NCBI RefSeq assembly: GCF_022045235.1
Contig: NW_027266275.1
Coordinates: forward strand, 28,148,001-28,212,000
Reading direction: 5' to 3'
DNA: 64,000 bases
From: Haliotis cracherodii
Lineage: Eukaryota
The translations under genes and the position numbers were made by a program. This document shows, piece by piece, positions 32,801 through 55,882 of the stretch. The first letter of the stretch is position 1; each line of letters opens with the position of its first letter. The notes below the pieces were generated by a model. The model searched no databases. It saw only the letters and a list, made by a program, of their open reading frames with translations, and was not told the DNA's origin.

Positions 32801-35800
32801 CAGAAGAAGCGATCTGAGAAGAGAGAGGAAGTGAAGAAGAAGGCAGAGGAAGAGGTGGCCTACCTGCAGGCAAGTGGTAAGATCACAAAGAGTCCCTCCA
32901 GGTCATCTTTAGCCAAGAAAAAGGGGGGTTCCAGAAATGGGTCCAAGAGGGGGGCTTCTAGTCCCAGAGAGGGTCAGGACAATGCTTCACAATCCACACC
33001 CAGAGATGGGGGGCAGAATGGCAGCGCTGCACCTGGCACCGTGGAGGACATGTTCCAGGTAAGAACACGGCAATCGGGAGTTAAAGTTGCTTTAGTGCTT
33101 TATGTGACAGCTGACTTCATGTGCCAAGTACTTTCTGAAACGAGTAAAAAAGATACTTAGATTGAATGTGGTTGTGATCCTTTGAGTGCTCAGAGTGGAA
33201 TTGTTTTCAACATAACCTTAACTACACCTTTAGCCAACCTGTAACAAACAGTATGCACAGATCATATTTGGATGGTTTTCACATTACCTTAATCTATAGA
33301 TTCACACATGTGTTCGAATCCCAGTTCGCCTCAATTATATTGTGTCATCAGCACCATGCCCATGCTCATTGGATTCACCAAAATCATGTCAAGCTTTCCT
33401 GAGGCTTTCCATCAGTCTTACATGCCGTGATATCACTGGAAAACTATTGAAAGCGCTGTTAAACCCAACTAACTCACACACTCACATGGGCGGTCGGGTA
33501 GCCTAGTGGTTAAAGCGCTGCTCGTCACGCCCAAGACCCTGGTTCGATTCCCGACATGGGTACAATGTGTGAAGCCCATTTCTGGTGTCCTCCGCCGTGA
33601 TATTGCTGGAATATTGCTAAAAGCGGCGTAAAACCATACTCACTCACTCCCACACTCACATAGATTCACAATAGTTGTAATGCTAGGACAGCTTTATGCA
33701 AGTAGGCCTTTGGAATGCATAGAAGAAAAAATATGGGTCCACTGATCTGCAGTTGTAAAATATCTGCTCTATGAATCTTTTGTTGGAATGACCTCACATA
33801 AAATCAATAGTGGTGTCATGAACAATGGATGACATCGTCGTCATTTATTTGTGACAGTGTGTTCATATGACATCAGATTGCTATGGAACTCTTTGCAGAC
33901 AATTGAACAATTAACCAATCAGCTTTGAGCTAAAATTATGATGCTCAGTAAGAATTATGTATGTACCACTATTTTGTGAGACATGCAAGAACAATTACAC
34001 TTTTTCTAGTCATAATGTGGCTGAAATATTGTTTCTTTCAGTCAGTAAATGTAAGTACTGTATAAATCATGTCCTCAGATGCCGTCATCACATCGCGAGG
34101 AGGCGGAGGGTGCAGGTGCCGAACCCTCTCCTCGTCTGCCTAGTCCCAGTCAGGCTGCTACAAGGTCCACGCTCAATGACCTGTTTGACACACTCAAGAA
34201 ACTTGAGGAAGAGGAGAACTTTGTTACTCCTCGAGCAGAGAAAAGAACATCATGGTGTAAGTGGACAAGCATGATTACTTGTAATGAGCTTGTCTTCGGT
34301 CATCCACATATTCACTGGCTAAAACTAAATGTGATTTACGTGGCAGGGTTCCGATTAGTTTTGTCTCATTGAACTTTTATGAATCTGGACCATGATATAT
34401 TGTTATGTGGATAAGGAAATCAAGTATGAAAATCCGGTATATATGGCAATTTGCAGAAACTGGTTTGTTTTTTTAATGTTTGAAGTTATACACTTGTATA
34501 TTGGATGATACTGGTTGTTTTCTGGTTAAAAAATTTCCTAAAAACATTATGGAATAAAAACAAGAACTCCCTGAAGTGATTGTTTGACTATTTTACATTG
34601 TTTTGAGATCATGTATTGTCTGAATATGTCCAGTATTTGTTCTTATTGGATTAAGTATGTGTTGTGTTTTGAACAGTGACAGAATTGGAAAAGAGGAAAG
34701 AAAAGGAAGACTGCATTGAATCTAATCTGACCGCAGAGAACTTGGAGAAACTCAATTCAAAACATGGCCTGAAACAAAGTGGTTTCCTGACTGATGGAAA
34801 GCTGAAGAGTATTATGACGTTTTTGGATGAGGTGCAAGTCAGTGATCGTCTTAGTGAGATTGACACTGTAAGTCTCTCAGATACGTCTCATTTCAATATG
34901 CCATATTTGGCAATTCCTGCTACTAAGTTGGTTAAGTCTCCAACATCATCACTATTAACTGATTTCACATTAGATCACATGTCAAGCCGAAGAAGTTAAC
35001 TTGCTAACAAAGAATACACTATTCAATCATTCTAATCAAGCATCAAGAGCATCTTGAATTAATTGAGTGATTACTTAAGCTAGGGGTCGTCACTTGAATT
35101 AATTTGTTGACACAGTGATTTACAGCATGTGAAGTCTGGTCAGTCAGTCAGTCAGTGTTGAGTGAGGGTGAGGGATGTTGGGACTGTACTGCATTGTTGT
35201 GTGGCAGGAGATCAACAAGATGAATGAGGAGCTGGAGAAGCCAGCGCTGTTGGTGCCATCGGGGGAGGAGTTGGCCCAGCTGGAGCAGGCCCAGGCTGTG
35301 GCCAGTGAGGTGACTAGCACAGTCCTGTCACAGCGCCTCGAGCTGGATGAGAAACGCAGAACTGTTACTATGCTACAGAAAGCCCTGGTACGCCATGTGG
35401 TGGACATTTCAATAGACCTTGTTATTTATTCTAAAGAATGGAATAATTCCTATAATTTCAGTTTAGCTTTTTAATATAAGTTTGTCCAAATGTTCATTAA
35501 CATTAACTTTCTTTGGTTACAAGTTACATAGATGCCACTGACTGACTGGTGTAGACAGCAGTGTTAGATGCCACTGACTGACTGGTGTAGACAGCAGTGT
35601 AAGATACCACTGACTGCCTGGTGTAGACAGCAGTGTAAGATACCACTGACTGCCTGGTGTTGACATCAGTGTAAGATACCACTGACTGACCTGTGTAGAC
35701 ATCAGTGTTAGATACCACTGACTGACTGGTGTAGACATTAGTGTTAGATACCACTGACTGACTTGTGTTGACATCAGTGTTAGATACCACTGAGACATCA

Positions 35801-38800
35801 GTGTTAGATACCACTGACTGACCTGTGTAGACAGCAGTGTAAGATACCACTGACTGACTGGTGTAGACATCAGTGTTAGATACCACTGACTGACCTGTGT
35901 AGACAGCAGTGTAAGATACCACTGACTGACCTGTGTTGACAGCAGTGTTAGATACCACTGACTGACCTGTGTAGACAGCAGTGTAAGATACCACTGATTG
36001 ACCTGTGTAGACAGCAGTGTAAGATACCACTGACTGCCTGGTGTAGACATCAGTGTAAGATACCACTGACTGCCTGGTGTTGACATCAGTGTAAGATACC
36101 ACTGACTGCCTGGTGTTGACAGCAGTGTAAGATACCACTGACTGCCTGGTGTTGACATCAGTGTAAGATACCACTGAATGACCTGTGTTGACAGCAGTGT
36201 TAGATCCTACTTATGTTGACAGAACCAGCAGAGGGAGCTGACAGTGCGGCATGCCAGGGAGACTGAGAAGGAGATGAAGAAGAGGCTGGACCACCAGAAG
36301 GAAGAGTACGAGGAAACCGTCAAGAGACACCTTGGCTTCATTGATCAGGTACTTTTCTACTCACATACTGCCCTTTGTTTACTAATGTATCTTCACCATC
36401 TTTGAACAGTGTGCATTCTGCAGAGAAGGCTACACTTGTTCTCGTTGGATACCATTTCTGTGGTATGTAGTTGAGTAAAAGCATGACACTTTTCATTTTT
36501 ACACTGTTGAGAATCAGCCATTGAGTTTTCCTTGTTATGATGAGTGACCTTGTTAGTATGTTTTGGTAAGACATCGCTGTACAATGATCAAGTTATTTTC
36601 AGGTGTCACTTCAAGTGTTGGGTCAAGTCATGGAGTTTCTGTGTCTGTATATGTATGGACATCTTTGTTGGGTCATGTTGGGGTTTCTGTGTCTGTATGT
36701 GTTTCGACACCTGTGTTGGGTCATGTCGGGGGGTTTCTGTGTCTGTATGTGTTAAGACACCTTTGTTGGGTCATGTCGGGGTTTCTGTGTTGTGTCTGTA
36801 TGTGTTCTGACACCTTGGTTGGGTCATGTCAGGGGGTTTCTGTGTCTGTATGTGTTGGTACACCTGTGTTGGGTCATGTCAGGGTTTCTGTGTCTGTATG
36901 TGTTCTCACACCTTGGTTGGGTCATGTCAGGGGGTTTCTGTGTCTGTATGTGTTTGGACACTTGTGTTGGGTCATGTCAGGGTTTCTGTGTCTGTATGTA
37001 TTTGGACACCTGTGTTGGGTCATGTCAGGGGGTTTCTGTGTCTGTATGTGTTTGGACACCTGTGTTGGGTCATGTCAGGGGGTTTCTGTGTCTGTATGTG
37101 TTCTGACACCTTGGTTGGGTCATGTTGGGGTTTCTGTAATGTGTCTGTATGTGTTCTGACACCTTGGTTGGGTCATGTCAGGGGGTTTCTGTGTCTGTAT
37201 GTGTTCTGACACCTTGGTTGGGTCAGGTCAGGGGGTTTCTGTGTCAGTATGTGTTAGTACACCTGTGTTGGGTCATGTCAGGGGGTTTCTGTGTCTATAT
37301 GTGTTCTGACACCTTGGTTGGGTCATGTCAGGGGGTTTCTGTGTCTGTATGTGTTTGGACACATGTGTTGGGTCATGTCGGGGTACTGTGTCTGTATGTG
37401 TTTGTACACCTGTGTTGGGTAATGTCGGGGTTTCTGTGTCTGTATGTGTTCTGACACCTTGGTTGGGTCATGTCAGGGTTTCTGTGTGTATGTGTTCTGA
37501 CACCTTTGTTGGGTCATGTCAGGGGGTTTCTGTGTCTGTATGTGTTCTGACACCTTGGTTGGGTCAGGTCAGGGGGTTTCTGTGTCAGTATGTGTTAGTA
37601 CACCTGTGTTGGGTCATGTTGGGGTTTCTGTGTCTGTATGTGTTCTGACACCTTGGTTGGGTCATGTCAGGGTTTCTGTGTCTGTATGTGTTCTGACACT
37701 TTGGTTGGGCCAATTTGGGGTTTCTGTGTCTGTATGTGACCTGGTAGTATCATCTTGTGTTGCAGCTGATTGATGACAAGAAGACACTCAGTGAGAGATG
37801 TGAACAAGTGGTGAAGGAACTGAAAGTCATTGACAAGAAATACCAGGATAAGATAAAGTCCATGGATGACAGGTTGGTCATGTTTTTTGCATGGAGTCTT
37901 TCATCATGCAGGGTTTTTCAGGAAATTGACTGATTGTTATCCAGTGCCCTGAAGATTTTGATTTGAAGTGTTTTTGATTTTGCTGATGGTATAGAAGAAG
38001 GTGTTGCACATCCTCTAGTCTGTTATGTTCTATGTGCAGCCACAGTCGCAAGTAAGCAACATCCTCTTTAATCAGGTATGTTGTATGTGCAGCCATGGCC
38101 GTGAGATGCAGAAGCTGAAGGACATCCATGCTGCTGCTGAGAAGTTAAGGAGAGAGAAGTGGATTGAGGAGAAGACCAAGAAGATCAAGGTACAGCTAGA
38201 TATACAACTCTGTTAAGTGTTGTGGTAGCTACTCGGCAATCAACCCTGTGAGTGAGTTGGAATTTACACCGTTTTTAGCAATATTCCAGCAATGTCACAG
38301 CGGGGGACACCAGCAATGGCTTCACACATTGTACCAATGTGAATATACCCTGTGAAGTTTCCATTCAAAATATTAACCTTTCAAATGCTTGTAATCAATC
38401 ATCTTCCCGAGGCAAGAGAGAAAACTGACTATAAAAGTCCAGTTTCCACCCTTGCTAAACTAGGCTGTTATTATGGAGTTACATTTTGGCTGGACTAATG
38501 AGTCTATGCATAGTCCAGTCCAAATCGCGCACCGAAATCAAAATCCAGTTAGTAAACTGTCATGCAGATTTCGGTCGATTGCATGATTTGCAAAGCATGT
38601 GTACCGTCAACTTGTTGTCAACAGATATTTTCCAAGTCTTTCCATGTTTTTGATCAAGGCGCTCAAGTGATTTGAACCACTTTGCAATGTAAGACCCGTT
38701 TTATTACAATATAGATCTTGATTATTGATCAGATCGTCTTGACTGCGCGCCACCATTTTGTTTGAAACAAATGCAAGTGAAACGAGAGGTGGAATCTGAT

Positions 38801-41800
38801 TGGTCCATAGGAAAAGCTTAGAAGGGACATAACTCGTAATAACCACTGGTGGCGCTACAATCGAGCAAGGGTGGAAACTGGACTTTTAAAGTCAGTTAAC
38901 TCACTTGCCTTGGGAAGATGGTATTCAATTGACCAGAAAAAGGTATTTTCACAGAAATTTTTGGTGAATCCTTAGACTTTTTGTTCTTTTAAAGGTAAAT
39001 CTTTTTTCTGTGTTGGCTTTTTGCACAGAATGAACACTTGAGTAAATGACTACACATGTAAGAGTTTATTAATGTGTTGAGAGTGATGTAGACTAACCAG
39101 GAAGTTATGTGTACTCTAGGAGATGACAGTGAAGGGTTTGGAGCCAGAGATCCAACGTCTCATCGCCAAACACAAAGCAGAAATAAAGAAGATAAAACAG
39201 CTCCAGGAGGGTGACATCCTTGAGTCTGACGAGCGGGCTTCACATCGCTATGTGAAGATGATGGAGGAACTGCGTGAACAACTGGAGCAGGAGAAGGAAG
39301 CAGCATGCAACAGGGAGAGGCAGATGGCCAAGGAGAGGTACGCTTAGTTAAACCTGGAGTCAAACATAGCCATGTATAGAAGTGGTAGTATTTTTTCACT
39401 CAGCTTCACTTGTGTTATCCTCTTGATGGGTTCATAAAGACATGAAGAGTCCATGAATCTAGATTCTGTCTTGAAAATGCTTTGAAAAGGGATAATGTCA
39501 TGTGTAGGCATCTGTATGTCCTGTGTAGGCTTGTATGTCCCATGTAGGCATGTATGTCCTTTGTAGGCATCTGTCATGTGTAGGCATCTTTGTTATGTGT
39601 AGGCACATATGTCATATGCAGGCATATATGTCACGTGTAAGCATCTATGTTATGTGTAGGCACCTGTGTCATATGTGGGCATATATGTCATGTGTAGGCA
39701 TCTGTGTCATGTGTAGGTATATATGTCATGTGTAGGCATTTATGTCATGTGTAGGCATCTTCCATGTGTAGGCATCTATGCCATGTGTAGGCATCTATGT
39801 CCTTTGTAGGCATCATTTTTTAGGTATTTATGCCATGTGTAGGCATCTACTTGTAGTCATCTATGTCCTGTGTAGGCTTCTATGTCATGTGTGGGAATCC
39901 ATGTTGTGTAGGGATCTATGTCATGTGTAGGCACCTATGGCATGTGTAGGCATATATGGCATGTGTAGGCTTCTGTCATGTGTAGGCATCTATGTGTAGG
40001 CATCTCTGTCATGTGTAGGTATCTATGTGTAGGCATCTCTGTCATGTGTAGGCATCTATGTCATGTGTAGGCATCTATGTCATGTGTAGGCATCAATGTC
40101 GTGTAGGCTTCTATGTCATGTGAAGACATCCACATGTAGGCATCCATGTTGTGTAGGTATCTATGTAATGTGTAGGCATCCACATGTAGGCATCCATGTC
40201 ATGTAGGTATCCATGTCATGTAGGTATCTATGTCATGTGTAGGCATCCACATGTAGGTATCACTGTCATGTGTAGGCATCCACATGTAGGCATCCATGTC
40301 GTGTAGGCATCTATATCATGTGTAGACATTTATGTGTGTAGGTATGAGAAGCAGTTGCAGCAGGAGGAGGAGTCGTACCAGCAGCAACGGCGACGGCTCC
40401 ATGCCGAGGTACAGGAGGAGAAGGAGAGGCTGTCCCAGCACGCCTCCCGGCAACGCACTGAAGTGGACAAGCTGCAGAGACAGCTGGAGGACAGCCACAA
40501 GATGGCGCTTGATGCCATGAAGTCAGAGTTTGAAAAGGCTCGAGAAGAACAGGACAGGCGACATGCTGTAAGTAACACTACTAGCAAGGCATTCTATCTA
40601 GAGCAATACAAGGACAACTGTCTATGGATAAACAAGTTCATTAATAGAGCAAAGTGAAGTATGATCAACCATCAAAACCATACTTCACCTTAATGTACAT
40701 CACTTGCTTGTTAAAGATGTTTGGATATTATTCACCTTAACATTGCCTCAAAGGTCATAAAGAAGTTGTTTATCTCATCACACCAACTTGTAAATGTTAC
40801 TCAAAGATGTTGTAGCTATAATGTACATTTTCATTATAACCTGTCTATTCTACTCCTTTAGTGTAAATGTAGAACATGTCAGATTTTATCTGACCTCGAC
40901 CAAAGGTCATGACTCTCAACATAAAGTTTATGGAGTTTTAAGCTCTCCAGGGTGTGATTGTATAAAACAATCTTAGCGCTTAGGTGATCGTAACTCCCAT
41001 ACCTTTAACATAGACTTACGACAATCACAGTGCTAAGGTTGTGTTGTACAATGGCACCCTGCACTCTATTGTTGCCAGAATTTATTGCTATGCAAAATGA
41101 TTTCTATGATTTTTGATTACTATCCATTTATCTATCTATGACTGACAGCTCTTTTAGAATTGTCTCATTTACATATTTAATCTTTTTGCAACATAACTCA
41201 TACACATGATATAAGGTTACCACCTGACTTGAAGTCTTACACAAAATATGATATACATCCCATGGAATTGTCCCTGGCACCTGCTTGGAGTACCTTCTGG
41301 TTTCTTGACAAACCTGTAGGGATTCCAGGGAAGAATATAGCTCCCCAGCAACCTATGTTGTTGCTGTTGTAAGCGGCTCCTAAAGGGGTGGACAGTCTCG
41401 GTGGCTTGGTTGATGGTGTGTCTTTGTTGACATCGTATCCCAATTGCGTGGATCAATGCTGATAGAGGCAATCACTAGTATGCTGGAATATGGTGCTTCA
41501 TTAAATAACAATCAATCATGAATTTATCTCCTTGTCAAATTACATTTGTATCACAGGTCCCCATTACCATGAGGCCAAATTAATGGATAGTACTTCAAGT
41601 TAATGGATAGTTCTTCAAATTAATGGATAGTACTTCAAAGTAATGGATAGTACTTCAAAGTAATGGATAGTACTTCAAGTTAATGGATAGTACCTCAAAT
41701 TAATGGATAGTACTTCAAATTAATGGATAGTACTTCAAAGTAATGGATAGTACTTCAAATTAATGGATAGTACCTCAAATTAATGGATAGTACTTCAAAT

Positions 41801-44800
41801 TAATGGATAGTACTTCACCAAATGACGACAAAGTAGGACCATCTCAGTGCAATGGCATCATACACCATTGATGCTCTCCTGCCCCAGGCCCCGTGGTTGT
41901 AGCTGCGATGTAACTGAACTCCATGCAAGTACAAGAGATAGTAGTGTTGATAAATATTATTCCTTCTGCAGATTGAGGTCCGTGAGCTGAATGAACGTTT
42001 GCGTGTTGAGAAAGAGGCATGGGAGGAGAACTACATGAAGAAACAAGAGACGTGGCTGACTCAGAAGGAGCGGGAACTCAAGTCCCATGTGCGGAGAGAC
42101 CGGGACAAGGAGATAGAGCTGGTTATACAGCGGCTGGAAGAGGATGCCACACGGTCTAGGGACGAGTGTGAGCGAGCTGCAGAAAACAGAATCAAGTAAG
42201 TGATTGCTACTTTCTATCATGGTGAAGATTGACGTTGTCACATACAGACATCAAGAATAAACATCTAAGGTTCCTCTTCCTGTCAATTTTTCTAGTTTCT
42301 AGTTTATTTAGTTTTTACTAAATATGTTATAGTTTATTCACTGTACATTGATTATGCTAAAAAGAACTCTAAAAAGAACAATATTTTAATAATGAATTCA
42401 ATCCTTCTTTAAATAGAACATAAATATGCCACAAAAATGCACAGTACACCAGTGGCAACTCCCACTATTCATGATCAACATAACTGTTGCATGACATCAC
42501 AATGGCTGGTAATGATGTCATAATCAGTGTAACTTCATTCTCCCTGATGATACCAATGAAACATGTCGTTGAAAGTACTCAGCATTGTGTTTTGTTTATA
42601 TATGTACTACTTTACAAACCTCCCTGAAGACATTGGGTTTTGTGTACACTTTGTTGGTGATGCAGTTACATATCGCTTTCTGTTTCCTGTAGACGAATGC
42701 GGGACAAGTTCAATAATGAAATGAAGGAGCTCGAGAGTTCCGAGAGGCATGCAGTACAGAAGTACAATGAGATGAAGGTAAGATGCGCATGATGCCACAA
42801 GGTGTCACAACAGTACGTTATGTTAACACTGAATCAGTCTCTGACATTCAACAAAGGACATGCTACTTTGTCATGAAGGGACCAAGGACAAGGGACGTGG
42901 ATATGTAAGAGACATACATTTCATGTTGAAGTAAAAGAAAATATTTAAGAATTCCTGGCAACACAGCAGTGCATAGATACAACTAAGAGTATATTACCAA
43001 AGCAAGTCTATTCACAGGTAAAGTAAAAGCATGCATTTGAAAACCATATTTTACCATTTTATGTCCTGGCCTGTTTGTCTAACATCCATCATGTGTCGTG
43101 GGCATCTGGCATTAGCATCATCTCCACAGATACCAATGTACCAATGAAGATGAAACTTTGTATACTTGTTCCAACTGATATGGACACCCTAATTTGTTTA
43201 TGAAATTTGAATCCAATTTTCAATATTGGCCCTTTTGTTCAAGAGGTGCAAATCAGATATACAACATGGCTGCCACAACAGCCATAGTGAAAATCCTATT
43301 TGTGGTAAAACTAAAGTGAAATGTGGTATATGTTTAGTTAGTAATAGATAGGGCTCAACACATGTTCCCATTTTTCAAAATTTAAACTTTGGACCTTGTT
43401 TGGACTTACATTCTGTACATGGTCATTTCTTTTCACTGTAACCATCATCTTCTCAGAAACCACTGGACCAATGAAGCTGAAACGTCACAGCTTGTTTCCA
43501 CCACTGATGACGCCTGAACTGAGGTTCAAATGTGATTTTTTTACATGGCCACTACAGCCATTTTTATGAACTTATAAGACAGTTACTCAGCCATGTCAAA
43601 AATGTATATGTTTAGCTTGTAGTGGGACTTAATATATCTGTTCCACATTTTGCTATAATGTATATTTTGACCTTGTCTTGACCTTTGTGTTTTTATTATT
43701 TTCTTAAAACATGAGGCCAAATAGACTTCCTATCTGAAATTAGTTGTCCTGAGTAATTATTTGAATATCAATGCTGACAACTTTTCTTAAGTGTCTGTCT
43801 TTGTTGACATTTTCTCTATTTCCTGCAGATCCAGGTGAGCTACACTTCCCAGACACTATTTTATGTCTCCTTTAGTGCCAAGAATAGAAGATTCATCTAA
43901 CAGAGATGAGGATTGTGTTTCTGTGTTGTAGGCTCAGCTGACGGAGATCGAAGGTGAATGTGAAAGGTTGAAGGTCATTGTTAGACAGAAGGATCAGGAA
44001 GTCCTGGATATAAAGAAGGTAAAGCAAGGAAACCTGTGTCATACTTTCCCCATCTCATAAGATTTGTTTACCCAGGCCTCGTATTTGTATGTTATTTGCT
44101 TTACCTAACATTTACCTGCAATATATCTTGCATGAGAACTGTCCCTCCAAATACTTTGAAGCAATGCCTGGCAAACATATTCTATTGTTTGAATTGTTTG
44201 ATAGGCATTACTTAGAAGTTGACGGATGACAAGATAGACACAATTTTTTATGGATAACAACTTCTTTAATACTGTAAAAGGCGACGTTTTCGGTATAGAT
44301 CCTTATACCGTTGTCAAGCAAGACTTAGGAAAAACAGCCGACTCCTTCATCTCTGACTCCACGGACTTCTGCTCCAAACTCAAGAACATCACCAATCCAG
44401 ATCAAATCATCAGTTACGATGTAGTAGACCTTTTCACCAACGTACCCATAGATGACACTCTGCAAATTCTCCGCCGTCGCATCACTGAAACCCCTCCTGA
44501 AACCAGCCTAACCACCGAATCCATCATCGCCCTCACCACCGCCTGTATCTCCACCACATACTTCACCTGGGGCGACGAGTATTATCAGTCTTGCTTGACA
44601 ACGGTATAAGGATCTATACCGAAACGTCGCCTTTTACAGTATTAAAGAAGTTGTTATCCATAAAAAATTGTGTCTATCTTGTCTATATTCTCTGATGCTG
44701 TGTGTTGCAGCTGACAGACAGGCTCCATGAGGAACGCAGCCATGTATCAGATATCATTCGCCAGGAGTTTGCCGACCGCATTGTAACCACAGAGGAAGAA

Positions 44801-47435
44801 AACAAAAGGTTGAAAAATGAAATGTCAGAATTGAGAGCAAAACACCGAATTGAAATCGAGAGGGGGAAGAGCGACATCGAAGAAATCAAAAGACAAAAAG
44901 ATGATGAGATGGAGGAGGTACACAAGAGGTATAGAATCTCTGATTATGCATATTCATGTAATCAACAGTACAATGGTATTGAGCTGGGACGAGTCCAAAT
45001 TTATGACCCAGGTACTTGACCCCGTATTACACGACCCTACCCGTGGCCCTACTGTAGGTCTCAAGAGTTGGGTACTTAATATCCGATTTGGAATTGTTTT
45101 ACCGCAGCCCTGGCAAATGCTATTTAGATACATGTATAAAACAATCAGATCATGCATACACTGAAGTCGACTGAAGCTATATCTTTACTCAAACATGTAA
45201 ACGTCGGAAAGAATGTGTGCATAGGCAGAAAGAAATGCAAACATAAGCGACTTTTATCATGATTGTATTTAAACAACATATTACATAACTAACCATGGGT
45301 CTGGGTAGTCCTGTGGGTACCGAGGTCCCAACCCCAGTACACAAGTCACTCGTCCAGCCCTACAAAGGTATAATACACTAATGGTAGTTACCGGTAGTCT
45401 GAAGTTCATTGAGGAAGAAGATATGATTTTAATTCCAAATACTTAATTGTTGTACACCATGTTCCAAGGTCTCAGTATTTCATCTGGTCAGTAAAGGGGC
45501 AAGAATGTATGTGTATTATCAATGCATGTCAGCATATTTTGTGAGCAAAGGCAAAAGTGACATAGATTGTAGAGGTTACCACTTTCATGAAACCATTATC
45601 TGTGTGGTTGTAAATTTACAATATTGATGCTGCTGTAATGGTTGATATTGTGTTGTGAGGGTGCTGTAATGGTTGATGTGTGTGTTGTCATGGTGCAGTA
45701 ATGGTTGATGTTTGTGTTGTGAGGGTGCTGTAATGGTTGATGTGTGTGTTGTGAGGGTGCTGTGATGGTTGTCTTGTGAGGGTGTTGTAGTGGTTGATGG
45801 TTGTGATGTCAGGGTGCTGTAGTGGTTGATGGTTGTGTTGTTAGGGTACTGTAGTGGTTGATGGTTGTGTTGTCAGGGTGCTGTAGTGGTTGGTGGTTGT
45901 GATGTCAGGGTGCTGTAGTGGTTGATGGTTGTGTTGTTAGGGTGCTGTAGTGGTTGATGTGTGTGTTATCAGGGTGCTTTAATGGCGGATGTTTGTGTTG
46001 TCAGGGTGCTGTAGTGGCTGATGGTTGTGTTGTTAGGGTGCTGTAATGGTTGATGTGTGTGTGTTGTCGGGTGCTGTAATGGTTGATGGTTGTGTTATCA
46101 GGGTGCTTTAATGGCGAATGTTTGTGTTGTCAGGGTGTTGTAGTGGCGGATGTTTGTGTTGTCAGGGTGTTGTAGTGGCTGATGGTTGTGATGTCAGGGT
46201 GCTGTAGTGGTTGTTGGTTGTGTTGTTAGGGTACTGTTGTGGTTGATGGTTGTGTTGTCAGGGTGCTGTAGTGGTTGGTGGTTGTGATGTCAGGGTGCTG
46301 TAGTGGTTGATGGTTGTGTTGTGAGGGTGCTGTAATGGTTGATGTGTGTGTGTTGTCGGGTGCTGTAATGGTTGATGGTTGTGTTATCAGGGTGCTTTAA
46401 TGGCGAATGTTTGTGTTGTCAGGGTGCTGTAATGGCTGACGGTTGTGTTGTCAGGGTGCTGTAATGGTTTTGTTGTCAGGGTGCTGTAATGGTTGATGGT
46501 TGTGTTATCAGGGTGATGTAATGGCTGATGGTTGTGTTATCAGGGTGTTGTAATGGCTGATAATTGTGTTGTCAGGGTGCTGTAGTGGTTGATGTTTGTC
46601 TTGTCAGGGTGCTGTAATGGTTGATGGTTGTGTTGTCAGGGTGCTGTAATGACTGGTGGTTGTGTTGTCAGGGTGCTGTAGTGGTTGATGGTTGTGTTGT
46701 CAGGGTTCTGTAATGGTTGATGTTTGTGTTGTCAGGGTGCTTTGATGGTTGATGTGTGTGTTGTCAGGGTGCTGTGATGGTTGTGGTGTCAGGGTGTTGT
46801 AATGGTTGATGGTTGTGTTATCAGGGTGCTGTAATGGCTGATGTTTGTGTTGTCAGGGTGCTGTAATGGTTGATGGTTGAGTTGGCAGGTGCTGTAATGG
46901 TTGATGGTTGTGTTGTCAGGGTGCTGTGATGGTTGTGGTGTCAAGGTGCTGTAATGGTTGATTGTTGTGGTGTCAGGGTGCTGTAGTGGTTGATGGTTGT
47001 AATGTCAGGGTGCTGTAGTGGTTGATGGTTGTGTTGTCGGGTGCTGTAATGGTTGATGGTTGAGTTGGCAGGTGCTGTAATGGTTGATGGTTGTGTTGTC
47101 AGGGTGCTGTAATGGTTGATGTGTGTGTTGTCGGGTGCTGTAATGGTTGATGGTTGAGTTGTCAGGGTGCTGTAATGGTTGATGGTTGTGTTGTCAGAAT
47201 GCTGTAATGGTTGATGGTTGTGTTGTCAGTGTGCTGTAATGGTTGATGGTTGTGTTGTCAGTGTGCTGTAATGGTTGATGGTTGTGTTGTCAGGGTGAAG
47301 CAGGCCATCGTGAAGAAAGAGGAGGTGGTGAACCAGCTACGTCAGCAGTACCAGGCTGCCACCAAACGTGCAGACCACCTGGAGGGGCTCCTCAACCAAC
47401 AGCGGAAACAGCTCCTGGGGAAGAAAGCTACATAG
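26690..47435 (+). CDS. CEP131: Centrosomal protein of 131 kDa (AZI1), about 1150 aa. Exons: 26690-26827, 28566-28623, 29764-29866, 30417-30540, 31295-31981, 32795-33058, 34079-34256, 34677-34867, 35208-35387, 36223-36348, 37766-37872, 38093-38189, 39120-39337, 40342-40567, 41972-42195, 42693-42777, 43932-44018, 44711-44928, 47294-47435
   Basis: N-terminal DLSLTG..RRPGS, DFLALFE, IQ motif (LNTAALKIQRWFRRH), RHLGFIDQLIDDKK, EKLRREKWIEEKTKKIKEMTVKGLEPEIQ, RDKEIELVIQRLE, and C-terminal KRADHLEGLL match recalled CEP131. Phases are consistent (3453 nt). Confidence 0.95.
28566..28623 (+). CDS. CEP131: CEP131 exon (TSSNDVFLSDRDKRKSPR)
   Basis: Phase 0-1 bridge, AG/GTAA bounded. Confidence 0.7.
28870..29755 (+). 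repeat. Minisatellite, about 39-bp unit
   Basis: GGTATGTTGTGGATGTGGCAGACTTGGGTAGCTGTCATT. Confidence 0.95.
29764..29866 (+). CDS. CEP131: CEP131 exon (GPPAPVSG...KEPNV)
   Basis: TTTCAG/GTGAGT bounded, phase 1-2. Confidence 0.75.
30417..30540 (+). CDS. CEP131: CEP131 exon (KDDFLALFE...AWEQQ)
   Basis: DFLxLFE motif, AG/GTGAG bounded. Confidence 0.85.
30868..31115 (+). repeat. Degenerate minisatellite, about 40-bp unit
   Basis: CTGGTATTCACATAGCAGTGTCATAGG... repeated. Confidence 0.75.
31295..31981 (+). CDS. CEP131: CEP131 large exon with IQ motif
   Basis: 229 open codons including IQRWFRRH and EEKARQARLQAIQ. Confidence 0.9.
32795..33058 (+). CDS. CEP131: CEP131 exon (ELQKKRSEK...EDMFQ)
   Basis: AG/GTAAG bounded, phase 0-0. 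Confidence 0.88.
33488..33650 (+). mobile_element. Short tRNA-derived SINE with (ACTC)n tail. Partial or related copies at about 32302-32432, 32610-32775, 33310-33480, 38248-38341, 56790-56912, 62215-62300, 63935-63990
   Basis: A box TAGCCTAGTGG, B box GGTTCGATTCCC, tail AAAGCGGCGTAAAACCATACTCACTC; TSD CACACTCACAT. Confidence 0.88.
34079..34256 (+). CDS. CEP131: CEP131 exon (...TLNDLFDTLKKLEEEE...)
   Basis: Conserved motif, AG/GTAAGT bounded. Confidence 0.88.
34677..34867 (+). CDS. CEP131: CEP131 exon (LTAENLEK...KLKSIMTFLDEV)
   Basis: Conserved motif, phase 1-0. Confidence 0.88.
35208..35387 (+). CDS. CEP131: CEP131 exon (EINK...LELDEKRRTVTMLQKAL)
   Basis: Coiled coil, AG/GT bounded. Confidence 0.9.
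35528..36205 (+). repeat. Minisatellite, 36-bp unit
   Basis: ATACCACTGACTGACTGGTGTAGACAGCAGTGTAAG. Confidence 0.95.
36223..36348 (+). CDS. CEP131: CEP131 exon (NQQRELT...RHLGFIDQ)
   Basis: Conserved peptide. Confidence 0.92.
36615..37740 (+). repeat. Minisatellite, about 50-bp unit
   Basis: GGGTTTCTGTGTCTGTATGTGTTCTGACACCTTGGTTGGGTCATGTCAG. Confidence 0.95.
37766..37872 (+). CDS. CEP131: CEP131 exon (LIDDKKTLSERCE...)
   Basis: Conserved peptide. Confidence 0.92.
38093..38189 (+). CDS. CEP131: CEP131 exon (...EKLRREKWIEEKTKKIK)
   Basis: Conserved peptide. Confidence 0.93.
38400..38920. mobile_element. MITE with about 57-bp TIRs and a 9-bp TSD
   Basis: CATCTTCCC...CCCTTGCT / AGCAAGGG...GGGAAGATG; flanks GTAATCAAT and GTATTCAAT. 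Confidence 0.85.
39120..39337 (+). CDS. CEP131: CEP131 exon (EMTVKGLEPEIQRLIAKHK...)
   Basis: Conserved peptide. Confidence 0.94.
39495..40341 (+). repeat. Minisatellite, about 19-bp unit
   Basis: ATGTCATGTGTAGGCATCT. Confidence 0.95.
40342..40567 (+). CDS. CEP131: CEP131 exon (YEKQLQQEE...QQQRRRLHAEV...)
   Basis: Conserved coiled coil. Confidence 0.92.
40948..41061. mobile_element. Short palindromic MITE (related copy at about 3417-3520)
   Basis: CAGGGTG...CACCCTG fold-back; shares the AACTCCC..AACATAGACTTA core with 3417-3520. Confidence 0.6.
41577..41817 (+). repeat. Tandem repeat, 20-bp unit, 12 copies
   Basis: TAATGGATAGTACTTCAAAT. Confidence 0.97.
41972..42195 (+). CDS. CEP131: CEP131 exon (EKEAWEENY...RDKEIELVIQRLE)
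   Basis: Conserved peptide. Confidence 0.93.
42693..42777 (+). CDS. CEP131: CEP131 exon (RMRDKFNNEMKELESSER...)
   Basis: Phase 2-0, AG/GTAAG bounded. Confidence 0.9.
43932..44018 (+). CDS. CEP131: CEP131 exon (AQLTEIEGECERL...)
   Basis: Phase 0-0, coiled coil. Confidence 0.88.
44228..44683 (+). mobile_element. Penelope-like retroelement fragment: RT piece between inverted 98-bp terminal (pLTR-like) repeats
   Basis: Arms 44228-44325 and 44587-44683 are reverse complements (one 1-nt indel); the core encodes IISYDVVDLFTNVP..TYFTW...YYQ (PLE-type RT). Confidence 0.85.
44593..44630 (+). ncRNA. Minimal hammerhead-ribozyme-like motif (variant core)
   Basis: UUGACAA-C-[GGUAUA/UAUACC stem II]-GAAAC-GUC; mirror copy on the minus strand at about 44281-44319. 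Confidence 0.55.
44711..44928 (+). CDS. CEP131: CEP131 exon (LTDRL...IIRQEFADR...EEVHKR)
   Basis: Conserved peptide. Confidence 0.93.
44979..45362. mobile_element. hAT-like MITE
   Basis: Degenerate TIR (TAGGGCTGGACGAGT-like); 8-bp flanks CAATGGTA and CAAAGGTA. Confidence 0.65.
45630..47297 (+). repeat. Minisatellite, 32-bp unit, about 50 copies
   Basis: CAGGGTGCTGTAATGGTTGATGGTTGTGTTGT. Confidence 0.97.
47294..47435 (+). CDS. CEP131: CEP131 last coding exon (VKQAIVKKEE...KRADHLEGLL...KKAT*)
   Basis: Conserved C-terminus, TAG stop. Confidence 0.92.
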
Positions 47436-48816
47436 TACCCTCAAGGCATCAATGTCCTCATGCGTAGACGTCACAGTATGGCTAGTTTTATCTCACCTTG
47501 ACACCATCAAAGTGGGCGCTTTTTATGGGTCGTTGTCTGTTGTCCATCCACCATTCTGTCTTTAGCACTGGACTTGAAATAGTTTCTTCTCCTCATCTGC
47601 TAACATGTAAATATGCTTTTCGCATCATATGTTCTAAATGTTCAAGACTACATGTGGGATGTTTATCTCCCCAGTAGCCATTGGAGATACTCCAGTCTTC
47701 AGGGGATGTTCATTAGATTCTTCCTGACAATGAAATAAGGTTTAAGATTTATTAATTCAAAACGATTCATAGCATTTACAAAAAATAAGGTGTGTAGAAT
47801 AAGTTGAACATCAAATTATATCTACCACATGTTCACTGAACTTTAAGAACTTTTAAGCAGAATTATGTTCCGTGACAAATAGTTAGAAATCTATCAAACA
47901 ATGAATGGTCGGATGTCCAACTTTTTATAGAGCATTATGTCATTCAAACTGGACCAATTGTCATGATATTTTTCATGTTCCTATAGACCAGGAAACCTTT
48001 TCAGATCATCTGAATAATCCTAGTACAATGCCAAACTTGATAAGTATTACATGGCTATTTTTACAGGATTTTTAAAAAAAGAAACCTACAGCTAAAATCG
48101 TATTGCTAAACTGGAACCTCATTACTGAACATCATGCTACTCACATTATCACTGCTGAGGTTTTATGTCATTTAATAAAGGTGAGCTTCTGTACCTCTGG
48201 CACTCTGTGTATTTATCACTCACATCTATCTGCTTCAGTTACATTGTTGTTCTATTTATATGTTTGGTAGTAAGTGCCCATGAAGTCCTGATGTGTATTT
48301 TTTGTTATTACTTATTACAAGCTTCAGAGCTTGTATGTAAATAGTATTTTATGTTTGAATGTTTTTTACTATTACAAAAGTATTTATTTAATACAAAACA
48401 AGAAATATATCTTTGATTATTTGTCACATACTGTTTTAGTAGTACACCCCCACATTAAGTCATAGCAAAAAAAGTATATTTGAAATATTATGACAACAGT
48501 AACACACTTAATAACACTAAAGAAAAATAAGCCGTCCACCAATATTTTCATTGCCTAAGAATCCATTGTTTTGTACTGTTTCAGTGTAACAAAGTTACCA
48601 TTCATATTGATTGATTTCTGTGAGATACATCTTGTTAATGTTATGGTACTTGTGAAAGTTTTGAGTTACATATCAATTATTTGTGATTATTTGTTAGTGC
48701 TGCTGTTGAATGAGATAAGGTGCTCAGTGTACAAACTGTCACAACCCCTTGTGGTATATCTTGAGTCCAATACTGTAATCATTATGCTTTTGTCGTGACT
48801 CTTGTAATGCCGTTAA

Positions 48817-49062: not shown

Positions 49063-49289
49063 TCATGTATTGTCATGACTCTAATGTTGTGTTGTGATGC
49101 TGGTAATGTCACATTAAACTCTGGAGTTGTGTCATGACCCGTATTGTGACATCCGGCATAAAACTAGCGTTCTGGTCATGTGTCTAGTGTTGACATGCTG
49201 CTGTGTCATGATGTGTAATGTTGCATCGCTCTAGTGTTGTGGTATGTCTCTAGTTTCATACTGTATGAGTGTTGAGTCATACAGTCAAT

Positions 49290-51365
49290 CTGGTGTTATC
49301 ATGCTGCATCACACCAGTGTGAGAGTCATGCTACATCAGTCTAATGTCATGCTGCATCACACTAGTGTGAGTCATGCCACATCAGTCTAGTGTTGTCGTG
49401 CTGCATCAGTCTAGTGTTGTGTCATGCTACATCACACCAGTGTGAGTCATGCTGCATCAGTCTAGTGTTGTCGTGCTGCATCAGTCTAGTGTTGTCATGT
49501 TGCATCAGTCTACTGTTGTGTCATGCTACATCACACAAGTGTGAGAGTCATGCTACATCAAACAAGTGTGAGAGTCATGCTGCATCAGTCTAGTGTTGTC
49601 GTGCTGCATCAATCTAGTGTTGTCGTGCTGCATCAGTCTAGTGTTGTCATGCCACATCAGTCTACTGTTGTGCCATGCCGTATAAGTCTAGTATTTTGTC
49701 ATGCCACATCAGTCTAGTGTTGTCATGCTGCTTCAGTCTAGTGTTGTCACGCTGCATCAGTCTAGTGTTGTCACGCTGCATCAGTCTAGTGTTGTCATGC
49801 CACCTAAGTCTACTGTTGTGCCATGCTGTATAAGTCTAGTATTGTGTCATGCTACATCACACAAGTGTGAGAGTCATGCCACCTCAATCTAGTGTTGTCA
49901 CGCTGCATCAGACTAGTGTTGTCATGTCACTTCAGTCTACTGTTGTGCCATGCTGTATAAGTCTAGTATTGTGTCATGCCACATCAGTCTAGTGTTGCAT
50001 GCTGCATCAAACTAGTGTTGTCACGCTGCATCAGTCTAGTGTTGTCACGCTGCATCAGTCTAGTGTTGTCATGCCACCTCAGTCTACTGTTGTGCCATGC
50101 TCTATAAGTCTAGTATTGTGTCATGCCACATCAGTTTAGTGATGTCATGCTGCATCACACTAGTGTTGTCACGCTGCATCAGTCTAGTGTTGTGTCATGC
50201 TACATCACACAAGTGTGAGAGTCATGCTGCATCAGTCTAGTGTTGTCGTGCTGCATCAGTCTAGTGTTGTCGTGCTGCATCAGTCTAGTGTTGTCATGCT
50301 GCATCAGTCTACTGATGTGCCATGCTGTATAAGTCTAGTATTGTGTCATGCTGCATCACACTAGTGTTGTCATGCTGCATCACACTAGTGTTGTCACGCT
50401 GCATCACACTAGTGTTGTCATGCCACCTCAGTCTAGTGTTGTCATGCTGCATCAGTCTAGTTTTATGTCATGCTACATCACACAAGTGTGAGAGTCATGC
50501 TGAATCAGTCTACTGTTGTGCCATGCTCTATAAGTCTAGTATTGTGTCATGCCACATCAGTTAAGTGTTGTCATGCTGCATCACACTAGTGTTGTCACGC
50601 TGCATCAGTCTAGTGTTGTGTCATGCTACATCACACAAGTGTGAGAGTCATGCTGCATCAGACTCGTGTTGTTGTGCTGCATCAGTCTAGTGTTGTTGTG
50701 CTGCATCAGTCTAGTGTTGTCATGCTGCATCAGTCTACTGATGTGCCATGCTGTATAAGTCTAGTATTGTGTCATGCCACATCAGTTTAGTGTTGTCATG
50801 CTGCATCACACTAGTGTTGTCACGCTGCATCACACTAGTGTTGTCACGCTGCATCACACAAGTGTTGTCATGCAGCATCACACTAGTGTTGTCACGCTGC
50901 ATCACACTAGTGTTGTCATGCTGCATCACACTAGTGTTGTCACGCTGCATCAAACTAGTGTTGTCATGCCACCTCAGTCTAGTTTTGTGTCATGCTACAT
51001 CACACAAGTGTGTGTCATGCTACATCAGTCTAGTGTTGTCGTGCTGCATCAGACTAGTGTTGTCATGCCACCTCAGTCTAGTGTTGTGTCATGCTACATC
51101 ACACAAAGTGTGTGAGTCATGCTACATCAGTCTAGTGTTGTCGTGCTGCATCAGACTAGTGTTGTCATGCCACCTCAGTCTAGTGTTGTGTCATGCTACA
51201 TCACACAAAGTGTGTGAGTCATGCTACATCAGTCTAGTGTTGTCGTTCTGCATCAGACTAGTGTTGTCATGCCACCTCAGTCTAGTGATGTGTCATGCCA
51301 CATCAGTCTAGTGTTGTCATGCTGTATTGTCATCAGTCTGCATTCTATTGTCATGCTGCATCATT
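49290..51365 (+). repeat. Minisatellite, about 24-bp unit with higher-order variant blocks
   Basis: GCTGCATCAGTCTAGTGTTGTCAT. Confidence 0.95.
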
Positions 51366-55375: not shown

Positions 55376-55882
55376 CGAGGACTGGTCAAAAAGTTTTAAG
55401 CCTAACAAACAAATTCAATATTTGTAAAAGTGCTTTTAATTTTATATTTCAACATAATATCCCTGCTTTTCAATACACTTGTCAAATCGATACTGAAGCT
55501 TTTCAATTCCAGTCAAGTAAAAGTTTTCTGAAGACACCCAGAAAACCCCATCCATGGCAGCTTTGAATTCATCGTTGTCGGCATAGCAGTTTCCACGAAG
55601 GTGTTCTTTCATTTTAGGTAACAAGAGGAAATCACTCGCTGCCAGGTCTGGCGAGTATGGAGGGTGAGGAAGCTCTTCAATTTCGCATTGTCGCACAGCA
55701 GCCTTTGCAAGTCAAGAGGTATGAGCGGTGGCATTGTCATGATGAAGTAGAGCTCCAGCAGTCAACAGACCAAATACACTTGCAATGAACTACTCAAACA
55801 ATGTACTACACTGACTTGTTCACTTTGCTATGTCTCATAGTTGAAAGTTAGTCAGGCTTAGAACGTTTCTGACCAGTCCTCG
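55376..55882 (-). mobile_element. Internally deleted mariner (DD34D) element
   Basis: About 30-bp TIRs (CGAGGACTGGTCA...), TA duplications at 55374-55375 and 55883-55884; transposase remnant HHDNA..(34 aa)..YSPDLAASDF with an internal stop. Confidence 0.93.

What the first reader, a model, noticed from the sequence alone, without database searches (positions are those of the whole stretch)
45630..47297. About 50 tandem copies of the CEP131 terminal splice acceptor, nearly all followed by an in-frame stop
Seen: the real last-exon acceptor GTTGTGTTGTCAG|GGTG (47293/47294) is the final unit of a 32-bp minisatellite, so the intron holds dozens of essentially identical acceptors. The upstream exon ends in phase 2, so splicing to a typical upstream unit reads AG|G GTG CTG TAA (R-V-L-stop). 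Unit variants switch among TAA, TAG and TGA at that codon (ctgTAAtgg, ctgTAGtgg, ctgTGAtgg, cttTAA, cttTGA) and rarely lose the stop. The few units just before the true site differ after the AG (CAG|TGTG, CAG|AATG). Inference: either an array of alternative terminal exons giving a CEP131 lacking about 44 C-terminal residues, with a copy-number-dependent 3' UTR and no downstream exon junction to trigger NMD, or a decoy array that must be silenced (it is UG-rich, the type bound by TDP-43/CELF). Caveat: A/G transition bias alone could explain the stop-to-stop changes.
Basis: partly seen in the sequence, partly recalled or inferred. Interest (0 to 1): 0.8.

Follow-up and report, generated by a model that had tools for sequence, protein, structure and literature searches.

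The report
Splice-acceptor minisatellite in abalone CEP131 intron
The last intron of a mollusc CEP131 gene ends in 53 head-to-tail copies of its own splice-acceptor region, but assembled RNA shows splicing only at the final, genuine copy, so it is one more example of a known repeat type ("mirage" minisatellite) and not a shown isoform switch.

Summary
A 32-bp minisatellite (53 units, 45629-47297) fills 70% of the last CEP131 intron. It runs in register through the true acceptor (AG 47292-47293) and 4 nt into the last exon. Five upstream copies match the true site over -22..+4. Of 67 upstream AGs, 39 would read R-V-L-stop.

The functional reading is not supported. Spliced RNA contigs from four runs (two organisms) all join 44928 to 47294. 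No contig covers the last two units next to the exon. Contigs can miss rare isoforms.

The stops are not evidence of selection. The array is T/G/A-rich, all three frames are closed, variants spread by multi-unit block duplication, and the few independent changes fit a neutral transition bias.

This is a "mirage" minisatellite, a tandem repeat spanning an exon-intron boundary. The type was described in amphioxus, and human F7 intron 7 has a donor-side counterpart. This scan has already reported it at least eight times on other DNA of this genome, which those notes take for black abalone.

New here: the same gene carries a second exact acceptor array (39495-40341) and a third, degenerate one (35530-36222). 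Arrays in this gene lean toward the acceptor end of their introns (p about 1.6e-4, post hoc).

It is most likely a tolerated amplification; exon-side signals probably pick the last copy.

The parts
44711..44928 (+). Penultimate CEP131 coding exon; the donor after 44928 is in phase 2 (AAG AG|gtatag)
   Evidence: Spliced contigs in 4 runs. 72% identity to Argopecten CEP131-like residues 1040-1111. Sequence read.
44929..47293 (+). Last intron, 2365 nt, GT..AG. The 5' 700 nt are not part of the array and are partly repeat-derived. The 3' 1663 nt are the array.
   Evidence: Joint 44926>47292 (cut +2), skipping 2365 nt, in X1-X4. Intron and array geometry.
45629..47297 (+). 32-bp minisatellite of 53 units. 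Each unit carries a branch-point-like TAAT/TTGAT, a T/G-rich tract and (C/T/G)AG. The units run in register with the true acceptor and the first 4 exon bases (GGTG).
   Evidence: TRF. Unit table. Per-column variation. Internal block duplications of 143 nt at lag 385 and 139 nt at lag 289. Locus-specific in the genome.
47197..47261 (+). The three decoy acceptors nearest the exon (AG ending at 47197, 47229, 47261). They are the only in-register decoys without G at +1 (|AATG, |TGTG, |TGTG).
   Evidence: That they are weakened by selection is inference.
47262..47293 (+). Final unit, which is the functional 3' splice-site region. Candidate branch A at 47271 (TAAT, 22 nt from the acceptor G) or 47278 (TTGAT, 15 nt). 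Acceptor AG at 47292-47293.
   Evidence: Motif positions. Junction use. The choice of branch point is inference.
47294..47435 (+). Coding part of the last exon: 45 codons plus the split Arg codon, stop TAG at 47433-47435. It opens with a purine-rich stretch (6 GAR triplets in 45 nt, against 0 after a decoy).
   Evidence: 81% identity to residues 1113-1144 of the 1155-aa Argopecten CEP131-like protein. tblastn. Sequence features.
47436..48180 (+). 3' UTR. RNA contigs reach at least 47800. The first AATAAA is at 48174. There is no AATAAA or ATTAAA inside the array.
   Evidence: The poly(A) site itself was not shown.

Best explanation
This is a 'mirage' minisatellite. A 32-bp piece of DNA, made of the last 28 nt of the intron (branch-point region, T/G-rich tract, CAG) plus the first 4 nt of the last exon, was amplified in tandem to 53 copies. 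The likely processes are replication slippage or unequal exchange, with later multi-unit block duplications.

Because amplification leaves the last copy joined to the exon, the gene keeps an intact 3' splice site. The other copies become intronic look-alikes.

The spliceosome uses the final copy. The likely reason (inferred) is that only this copy is followed by exon sequence: a purine-rich enhancer-like stretch, with the terminal exon defined together with the poly(A) signal. Each decoy is followed by G/U-rich repeat with G-triplets.

The in-frame stops are a by-product of T/G/A-rich sequence, not a selected feature.

The array is most likely neutral or slightly deleterious. The three decoys nearest the exon may have been weakened at +1 by selection (inferred).
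For: Array anatomy and register with the acceptor.

Only the canonical junction 44928>47294 appears in spliced contigs of 4 runs from 2 organisms. The same contigs show three upstream introns as positive controls. No contig lies over the array next to the exon.

The canonical junction gives uninterrupted homology to scallop CEP131-like residues 1040-1144.

The unit is unique to this locus, so it was copied from the local junction and not inserted as a dispersed element.

Block duplications are present inside the array.

Stops are expected. All 3 frames are closed, and the longest open run is 31 codons. Among shuffled units, 18% have a stop within 4 codons and 83% within 32. At the TAA codon there are three distinct variant states, two stop-keeping and one stop-losing; with the array-wide transition:transversion ratio, P is about 0.24 (my arithmetic).

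The true exon start has 6 GAR triplets and 31% A. The stretch after a decoy has 0 GAR triplets and 11% A.

The repeat type and its harmlessness to splicing are described in amphioxus (PMC3087553, PMC3902484). Human F7 IVS7 has a donor-side version (PMC1557585).

The same gene has two more acceptor-copy arrays.
Against: The RNA evidence comes from assembled contigs. These drop rare variants and break in repeats, so low-level decoy use cannot be excluded.

One small X3 contig lies somewhere in 47022-47218 (mean bin depth 4.75) and I could not inspect it.

The runs' RNA status is a guess by the tool. It is supported only by the GT..AG joints they carry.

Only 4 exon bases are shared with the unit. 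I put the chance of that at about 3% from the base composition, so the exon-spanning part of the definition rests mainly on the register of the AG.

Selection of the true site by exonic enhancers is inferred from vertebrate splicing rules and was not tested in molluscs.

Array copy number was not confirmed in independent DNA.
Confidence: 0.8

Rival explanations
1. Leaky decoys. A minority of transcripts splice from 44928 to an upstream copy. The stop then lies in the last exon, so the transcript escapes NMD. The product is CEP131 ending in R-V-L and lacking the conserved C-terminal 45 residues. The amount would depend on copy number.
For: Five decoys match the true site over -22..+4. 39 AGs give R-V-L-stop. 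This is the last intron, so no exon junction lies downstream. There is an uninspected X3 contig within 47022-47218. Contigs cannot show absence.
Against: No assembled contig in 4 runs joins 44928 to any decoy among the joints shown, or runs from the exon into the array. The C-terminus is 81% identical between gastropod and bivalve, so loss should be selected against. Amphioxus mirages and human F7 pseudo-sites stay silent (PMC3087553, PMC1557585).
Confidence: 0.12
2. Functional cis-element. The array is kept because its G/U-rich RNA binds splicing regulators (TDP-43/CELF/hnRNP-like proteins), or stacks branch points and U2AF sites. Through this it would tune removal of the last intron or 3'-end processing of CEP131.
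For: The array is 81% G+T, with TGT and GGG motifs in each unit. Arrays lean toward acceptors in this gene.
Against: There is no conservation evidence. Units differ by about 15% and show block turnover typical of neutral minisatellites. Sister arrays in the same gene have unrelated unit sequences, which points to a shared origin process and not a shared binding function. Nothing here tests binding.
Confidence: 0.05
3. Assembly exaggeration. An acceptor-region repeat exists, but its length of 53 units is inflated or collapsed by assembly of a repetitive stretch.
For: No independent DNA evidence was obtained. Short-read contigs cannot span the array. Abalone intronic minisatellites vary in copy number between individuals (PMC6905558).
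Against: The units carry a non-periodic pattern of variants and internal block duplications, which argues against a simple assembler loop. Many similar arrays are reported in this assembly (unchecked notes).
Confidence: 0.05

Closest known systems
'Mirage' minisatellites of amphioxus (Adh3, troponin C, globins BflGb6/BflGb9, PGBD5). Sources: PMC3087553 and PMC3902484, which cite Canestro et al. 2002 NAR.
   Same: A tandem repeat whose unit spans an exon-intron boundary. Many units keep the AG signal. The genuine junction is the copy attached to the exon. mRNA is spliced normally. Units are 10-160 bp.
   Different: The host is a mollusc, not a cephalochordate. There are far more copies (53, against 3-6 in the globins). 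Only 4 exon bases lie in the unit. It sits in the last intron, so decoy use would not trigger NMD. Length polymorphism and somatic instability were not tested here.
Human F7 intron 7 37-bp VNTR with 5' pseudo-sites (PMC1557585)
   Same: A minisatellite whose boundary unit is the authentic splice site. It is followed or preceded by sequence-identical pseudo-sites that stay silent. It is a natural model for how one site is chosen among identical ones.
   Different: F7 repeats the donor, and the first (most upstream) site is chosen by 5'-to-3' scanning. Here the acceptor is repeated and the last (most downstream, exon-attached) copy is chosen. F7 has only 6-8 copies (from my own knowledge, not checked here).
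Other splice-junction arrays already reported by this scan in the same genome (notes s1-823176, s1-831974, s1-841662, s1-834460, s1-820420, s1-823187, s1-834443, s1-823195)
   Same: Same genome, same architecture, and the same outcome of canonical splicing only.
   Different: Different genes and unrelated unit sequences. This one is in a terminal intron, and its gene carries three such arrays.
(TG)m(T)n tract at the CFTR exon 9 acceptor, bound by TDP-43 (from my own knowledge, not checked here)
   Same: A UG-rich repeat right upstream of an acceptor.
   Different: The CFTR tract is a pure dinucleotide repeat and does not copy the AG. Here the longest pure TG run is only about 12 nt, and the units are complex 32-mers carrying their own AG.

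Membership tests
Mirage minisatellite | Tandem array of minisatellite-size units | tested here: met
   32 bp x 53.1 copies, 84% matches; 53 aligned units.
Mirage minisatellite | The repeat unit spans an exon-intron boundary, with the splice signal plus exon bases inside the unit | tested here: met
   The array runs in register through AG 47292-47293 and 4 exon bases (GGTG) to 47297. The exon part is short: 4 nt, with about 3% chance by my estimate from the composition.
Mirage minisatellite | The authentic junction is the array's boundary unit, and mRNA is spliced normally | tested here: met
   Joint 44928>47294 in one spliced contig of each of 4 runs. This junction gives contiguous CEP131 homology. 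Rare aberrant forms are not excluded.
Mirage minisatellite | The unit is derived from the local junction, not from a dispersed repeat family | tested here: met
   Matches of 85% identity or more lie only inside the array itself; elsewhere in the 1.18-Gb genome only 69-76% TG-rich matches.
Mirage minisatellite | Length polymorphism or instability between alleles or individuals | not testable with these tools
Internal block duplications show past turnover only.
   No such joint is listed, and no contig covers 47219-47291 in 4 runs. The evidence is from contigs, so rare use remains open.
   Three distinct variant states at the codon, 2 stop-keeping and 1 stop-losing; P is about 0.24 under the array's own transition:transversion ratio (my arithmetic). 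All frames are closed and composition predicts stops. Units are not independent.
UG-repeat splicing silencer (TDP-43/CELF type) | Regulator protein binding to the repeat RNA, with an effect on site choice | not testable with these tools
   Only composition is known: 41% G, 41% T, and 5 TGT per 45 nt.

The most novel reading that the evidence does not exclude
Splice-acceptor regions in this mollusc genome may be preferred seeds for minisatellite formation. In this one gene, 3 of about 15 acceptors are the last unit of an array, and arrays lean toward the acceptor end of their introns. That would point to a junction-linked amplification process. One candidate is slippage seeded by the TG-rich 'TGTGTTGYAG' acceptor tracts; a transcription- or splicing-coupled DNA event is another. 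If so, the abalone genome would be a natural library of graded decoy-site experiments, some of them (like this last-intron case) leaking truncated proteins in a copy-number-dependent way.
Probability: 0.15. Interest if true: 0.65.

Novelty: new member of a known kind. Interest (0 to 1): 0.3.

Why it matters
On its own it matters little. The gene is spliced normally, and the repeat type is described in amphioxus and, for donors, in human F7.

It does offer a clean natural test of 3' splice-site choice. Five decoys are identical to the real site over 26 nt, so the choice must come from outside the classical splice-site window. Because this is the last intron, any mis-choice would escape NMD and yield a CEP131 lacking a strongly conserved C-terminus.

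Together with the other cases in this genome, it suggests that mirage arrays are common in a mollusc. I found no paper reporting this. If confirmed, it would bear on how introns grow and how new splice sites and introns arise.

Tried and rejected
- **Pfam scan of six exon translations:** only sub-threshold coiled-coil and IQ noise, no family for CEP131.
- **ESM Atlas:** closed for new sequences.
- **The look-up of encoding contigs:** I tried it with the ORF over the last unit and exon, to get other assemblies or individuals.
- **Original mirage paper:** Canestro 2002, PMC117041, is not held. I relied on two papers that describe and cite it.
- **Unit tiling:** fuzzy-regex tiling failed and was replaced by wrap-around alignment. 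The repeat finder output for higher-order structure was uninformative and was replaced by a diagonal scan.
- **Rejected: selected stop codons.** See the neutral test.
- **Rejected: dispersed satellite or transposon origin**.
- **Rejected: recursive-splicing ratchet points.** The units read AG|GGTGCT, which is not an AG|GTRAGT-type juxtaposed donor.
- **Rejected: alternative poly(A) use inside the array.** No AATAAA or ATTAAA is present there.
- **Joined model:** Exons were searched one by one. Scripts only prefixed the two donor bases to downstream DNA to see where the frame closes.
- none occurred.
Full report
**What is there**

Reading 44700-47700 and Tandem Repeats Finder show one array at 45631-47297. 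It has period 32, 53.1 copies and 84% matches. A wrap-around alignment to the consensus, written from +1 after the AG to the AG, resolves 53 units.

Of the 53 units, 45 end in AG in register, the last and genuine one included. The others end in CAT or CAA, or have lost one base of the AG. Three units are 25 bp long because of a 7-nt internal deletion.

The array continues in register through the acceptor AG (47292-47293) and the first four exon bases, GGTG. The 5'-most units are the most degenerate (GAG instead of CAG). The last seven units are almost identical to the consensus.

Inside the array there are multi-unit block duplications: 143 nt at lag 385, 139 nt at lag 289 and 81 nt at lag 183. 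Unit variants were therefore spread in blocks and are not independent events.

The unit is private to this locus in the 1.18-Gb assembly. Elsewhere only weak 69-76% TG-rich matches appear. So it is not a dispersed satellite or part of a transposon.

**The gene**

Pfam has no model that recognises the exons. The 201-residue exon at 31418-32020 was searched against the representative protein library. It finds full-length proteins that their sources name centrosomal protein of 131 kDa. They come from scallop, a sea slug, lancelet, sea urchin and fishes, and the best hits are molluscs.

tblastn of the scallop protein maps 16 exon pieces across 30421-47423. The penultimate exon (44711-44928) aligns to scallop residues 1040-1111 at 72% identity. 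The last exon aligns to residues 1113-1144 of 1155 at 81% identity. The junction 44928|47294 therefore gives uninterrupted homology with one split Arg codon.

The C-terminal 45 residues that a decoy-spliced mRNA would lose are strongly conserved.

**Is any decoy used?**

It used three runs of the best-matching organism and one run of a close relative. The tool only guesses that these runs are RNA.

Each run holds one contig with GT..AG joints at 42195>42693, 42777>43932, 44018>44711 and 44928>47294, so they are spliced RNA. All four use the genuine acceptor.

Contig depth is zero over 45446-47021 in all runs. In the bin 47219-47415 the depth equals what the canonical contig alone contributes: for example 29.7 x 124/197 = 18.7 for X1, and likewise for X2 to X4. 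So no assembled RNA runs from the exon back into the last two units, as any decoy-spliced mRNA would.

Three limits apply:
- Contigs drop rare variants and break in repeats.
- 32 further joints were not displayed.
- One small X3 contig (mean bin depth 4.75) lies within 47022-47218 and could not be inspected. It does not connect to the exon.

**The stop codons**

Of the 67 upstream AGs, 39 give R-V-L-stop, and all 67 hit a stop within 21 codons. The codon is TAA in 32 units, TAG in 16, TGA in 4 and TTG in 1. Three of the four TGA arise from the 7-nt deletion.

This is not evidence of selection, for these reasons:
- The array is 41% T, 41% G and 12% A. All three frames are closed, with 35-42 stops per about 555 codons and a longest open run of 31 codons.
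- Random shuffles of the unit give a stop within 4 codons in 18% of cases and within 32 codons in 83%.
- At the codon itself there are only three distinct variant states, two stop-keeping and one stop-losing. With the array's own ratio of transition to transversion states (17:19), the chance of two or more keeping out of three is about 0.24.
- The sister array at 39495-40341 shows the same "every decoy is followed by a stop" property. There the stop is simply the next unit's own TAG acceptor.

**How the right copy is probably chosen (inference)**

Five decoys are identical to the real site over -22..+4, and six over -20..+3. The discrimination must therefore come from further downstream.

The real exon opens with a purine-rich stretch: 6 GAR triplets and 31% A in 45 nt. 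A decoy is followed by G/U-rich repeat with 0 GAR triplets, 5 TGT and a G-triplet.

Under established exon-definition rules from vertebrates and flies, SR-type binding to such an exon start recruits U2AF to the adjacent tract. The poly(A) signal helps as well; the first AATAAA is at 48174 and there is none in the array. The first AG downstream of the chosen branch point is then used.

Each unit has its own branch-point-like TAAT and TTGAT. In the last unit these lie 22 and 15 nt from the acceptor G.

The three decoys closest to the exon are the only in-register ones without G at +1. In the second array the nearest decoy likewise reads TAG|A instead of TAG|G. This fits selection weakening only those decoys within reach of the exon complex. 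It is post hoc and rests on two or three mutational events.

**What it is called**

Earlier notes of this scan led me to the term "mirage". I checked the literature myself.

[quoted passage not shown] PMC3902484 says the same for amphioxus Adh, troponin C and PGBD5. The original paper is not held.

Human F7 intron 7 is the donor-side counterpart. It is a 37-bp VNTR whose first unit spans the exon-intron boundary, with identical silent pseudo-sites (PMC1557585).

Abalone intronic minisatellites are known to vary in copy number (PMC6905558). I found no paper describing splice-junction arrays in molluscs.

All defining features I could test are met. Allelic length instability could not be tested.

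**Context in the same gene**

The 19-bp array at 39495-40341 has about 47 units. It ends exactly at the TAG| acceptor of the exon starting at 40342. The frame is kept (..AKER|YEKQLQ..), and that exon is 80% identical to scallop residues 833-906.

The 36-bp array at 35530-36205 carries the 9-mer TGTTGACAG. This 9-mer occurs four times in the whole window: three times in the array and once as the true acceptor at 36214-36222. That is a third, degenerate case.

A 50-bp array ends 27 nt before the acceptor at 37765. Over the six CEP131 introns that hold arrays, array ends lie closer to the acceptor than uniform placement predicts (Fisher combined p = 1.6e-4). This result is post hoc and is driven by the two abutting arrays.

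Several acceptors of this gene share a T/G-rich tract of the form TGTGTTGYAG. That low-complexity sequence is a plausible seed for slippage.

**Verdict**

The functional interpretation is not supported by the available RNA evidence or by the neutral test. The structure is a large new example of a known repeat type, already reported repeatedly by this scan on other DNA of the same genome.

Its residual interest is as a natural splice-site-choice experiment in an NMD-insensitive position, and as part of a possibly genome-wide tendency in this mollusc.

Noticed in passing
window 39495-40341: Second mirage array in the same gene. About 47 units of 19 bp (ATGTCATGTGTAG|GCATCT type) end exactly at the TAG| acceptor of the exon starting at 40342. 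There are 46 upstream AG decoys, and all meet a stop. The decoy nearest the true site reads TAG|A instead of TAG|G.
   Followed up: yes
window 35530-36222: The 36-bp x 19 array carries copies of the 9-mer TGTTGACAG. In the whole 64-kb window this 9-mer occurs only in this array and as the true acceptor at 36214-36222. It looks like a degenerate third acceptor-copy array.
   Followed up: partly
window 36616-37738 and 28878-29755: A 50-bp x 23 array ends 27 nt before the acceptor at 37765. A 39-bp x 23 array ends 8 nt before a TTTCAG|G followed by an open frame that ends at a GTGAGT donor. That exon was not verified by homology or RNA.
   Followed up: partly
window 42777-43932: Spliced contigs in all four runs join 42777 directly to 43932. 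No 6-nt microexon around 43770-43840 is present in them, although rare forms could be missed.
   Followed up: partly
window 44067-44660 and 45052-45445: Summed contig depth is in the hundreds to thousands, with many loose ends and internal-deletion joints. These intron parts belong to abundant, expressed repeat families.
   Followed up: no
window 47022-47218: In run X3 only, a small contig (mean bin depth 4.75) lies on the exon-proximal units of the array without reaching the exon. It could be pre-mRNA, a cross-mapping TG-rich repeat, or a decoy product. It was not displayed.
   Followed up: no
window 49285-51324 and 58698-60390: Two more long arrays lie downstream of CEP131: 24 bp x 82 and 39 bp x 41. 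The unit of the second carries CTAAC plus C6AG, which looks like a branch point plus acceptor. No exon or gene was assigned to either.
   Followed up: no
window 55442-55696 (- strand): An 84-aa ORF contains a PYSPDLA..DF stretch, reminiscent of the C-terminus of mariner/Tc1-type transposases. This is from memory and was not searched.
   Followed up: no
window acceptors at 37765, 43931, 44710, 47293: Several CEP131 acceptors share a T/G-rich tract of the form TGTGTTG(C/T)AG in place of a classical C/T tract. It may make acceptor regions prone to slippage.
   Followed up: partly
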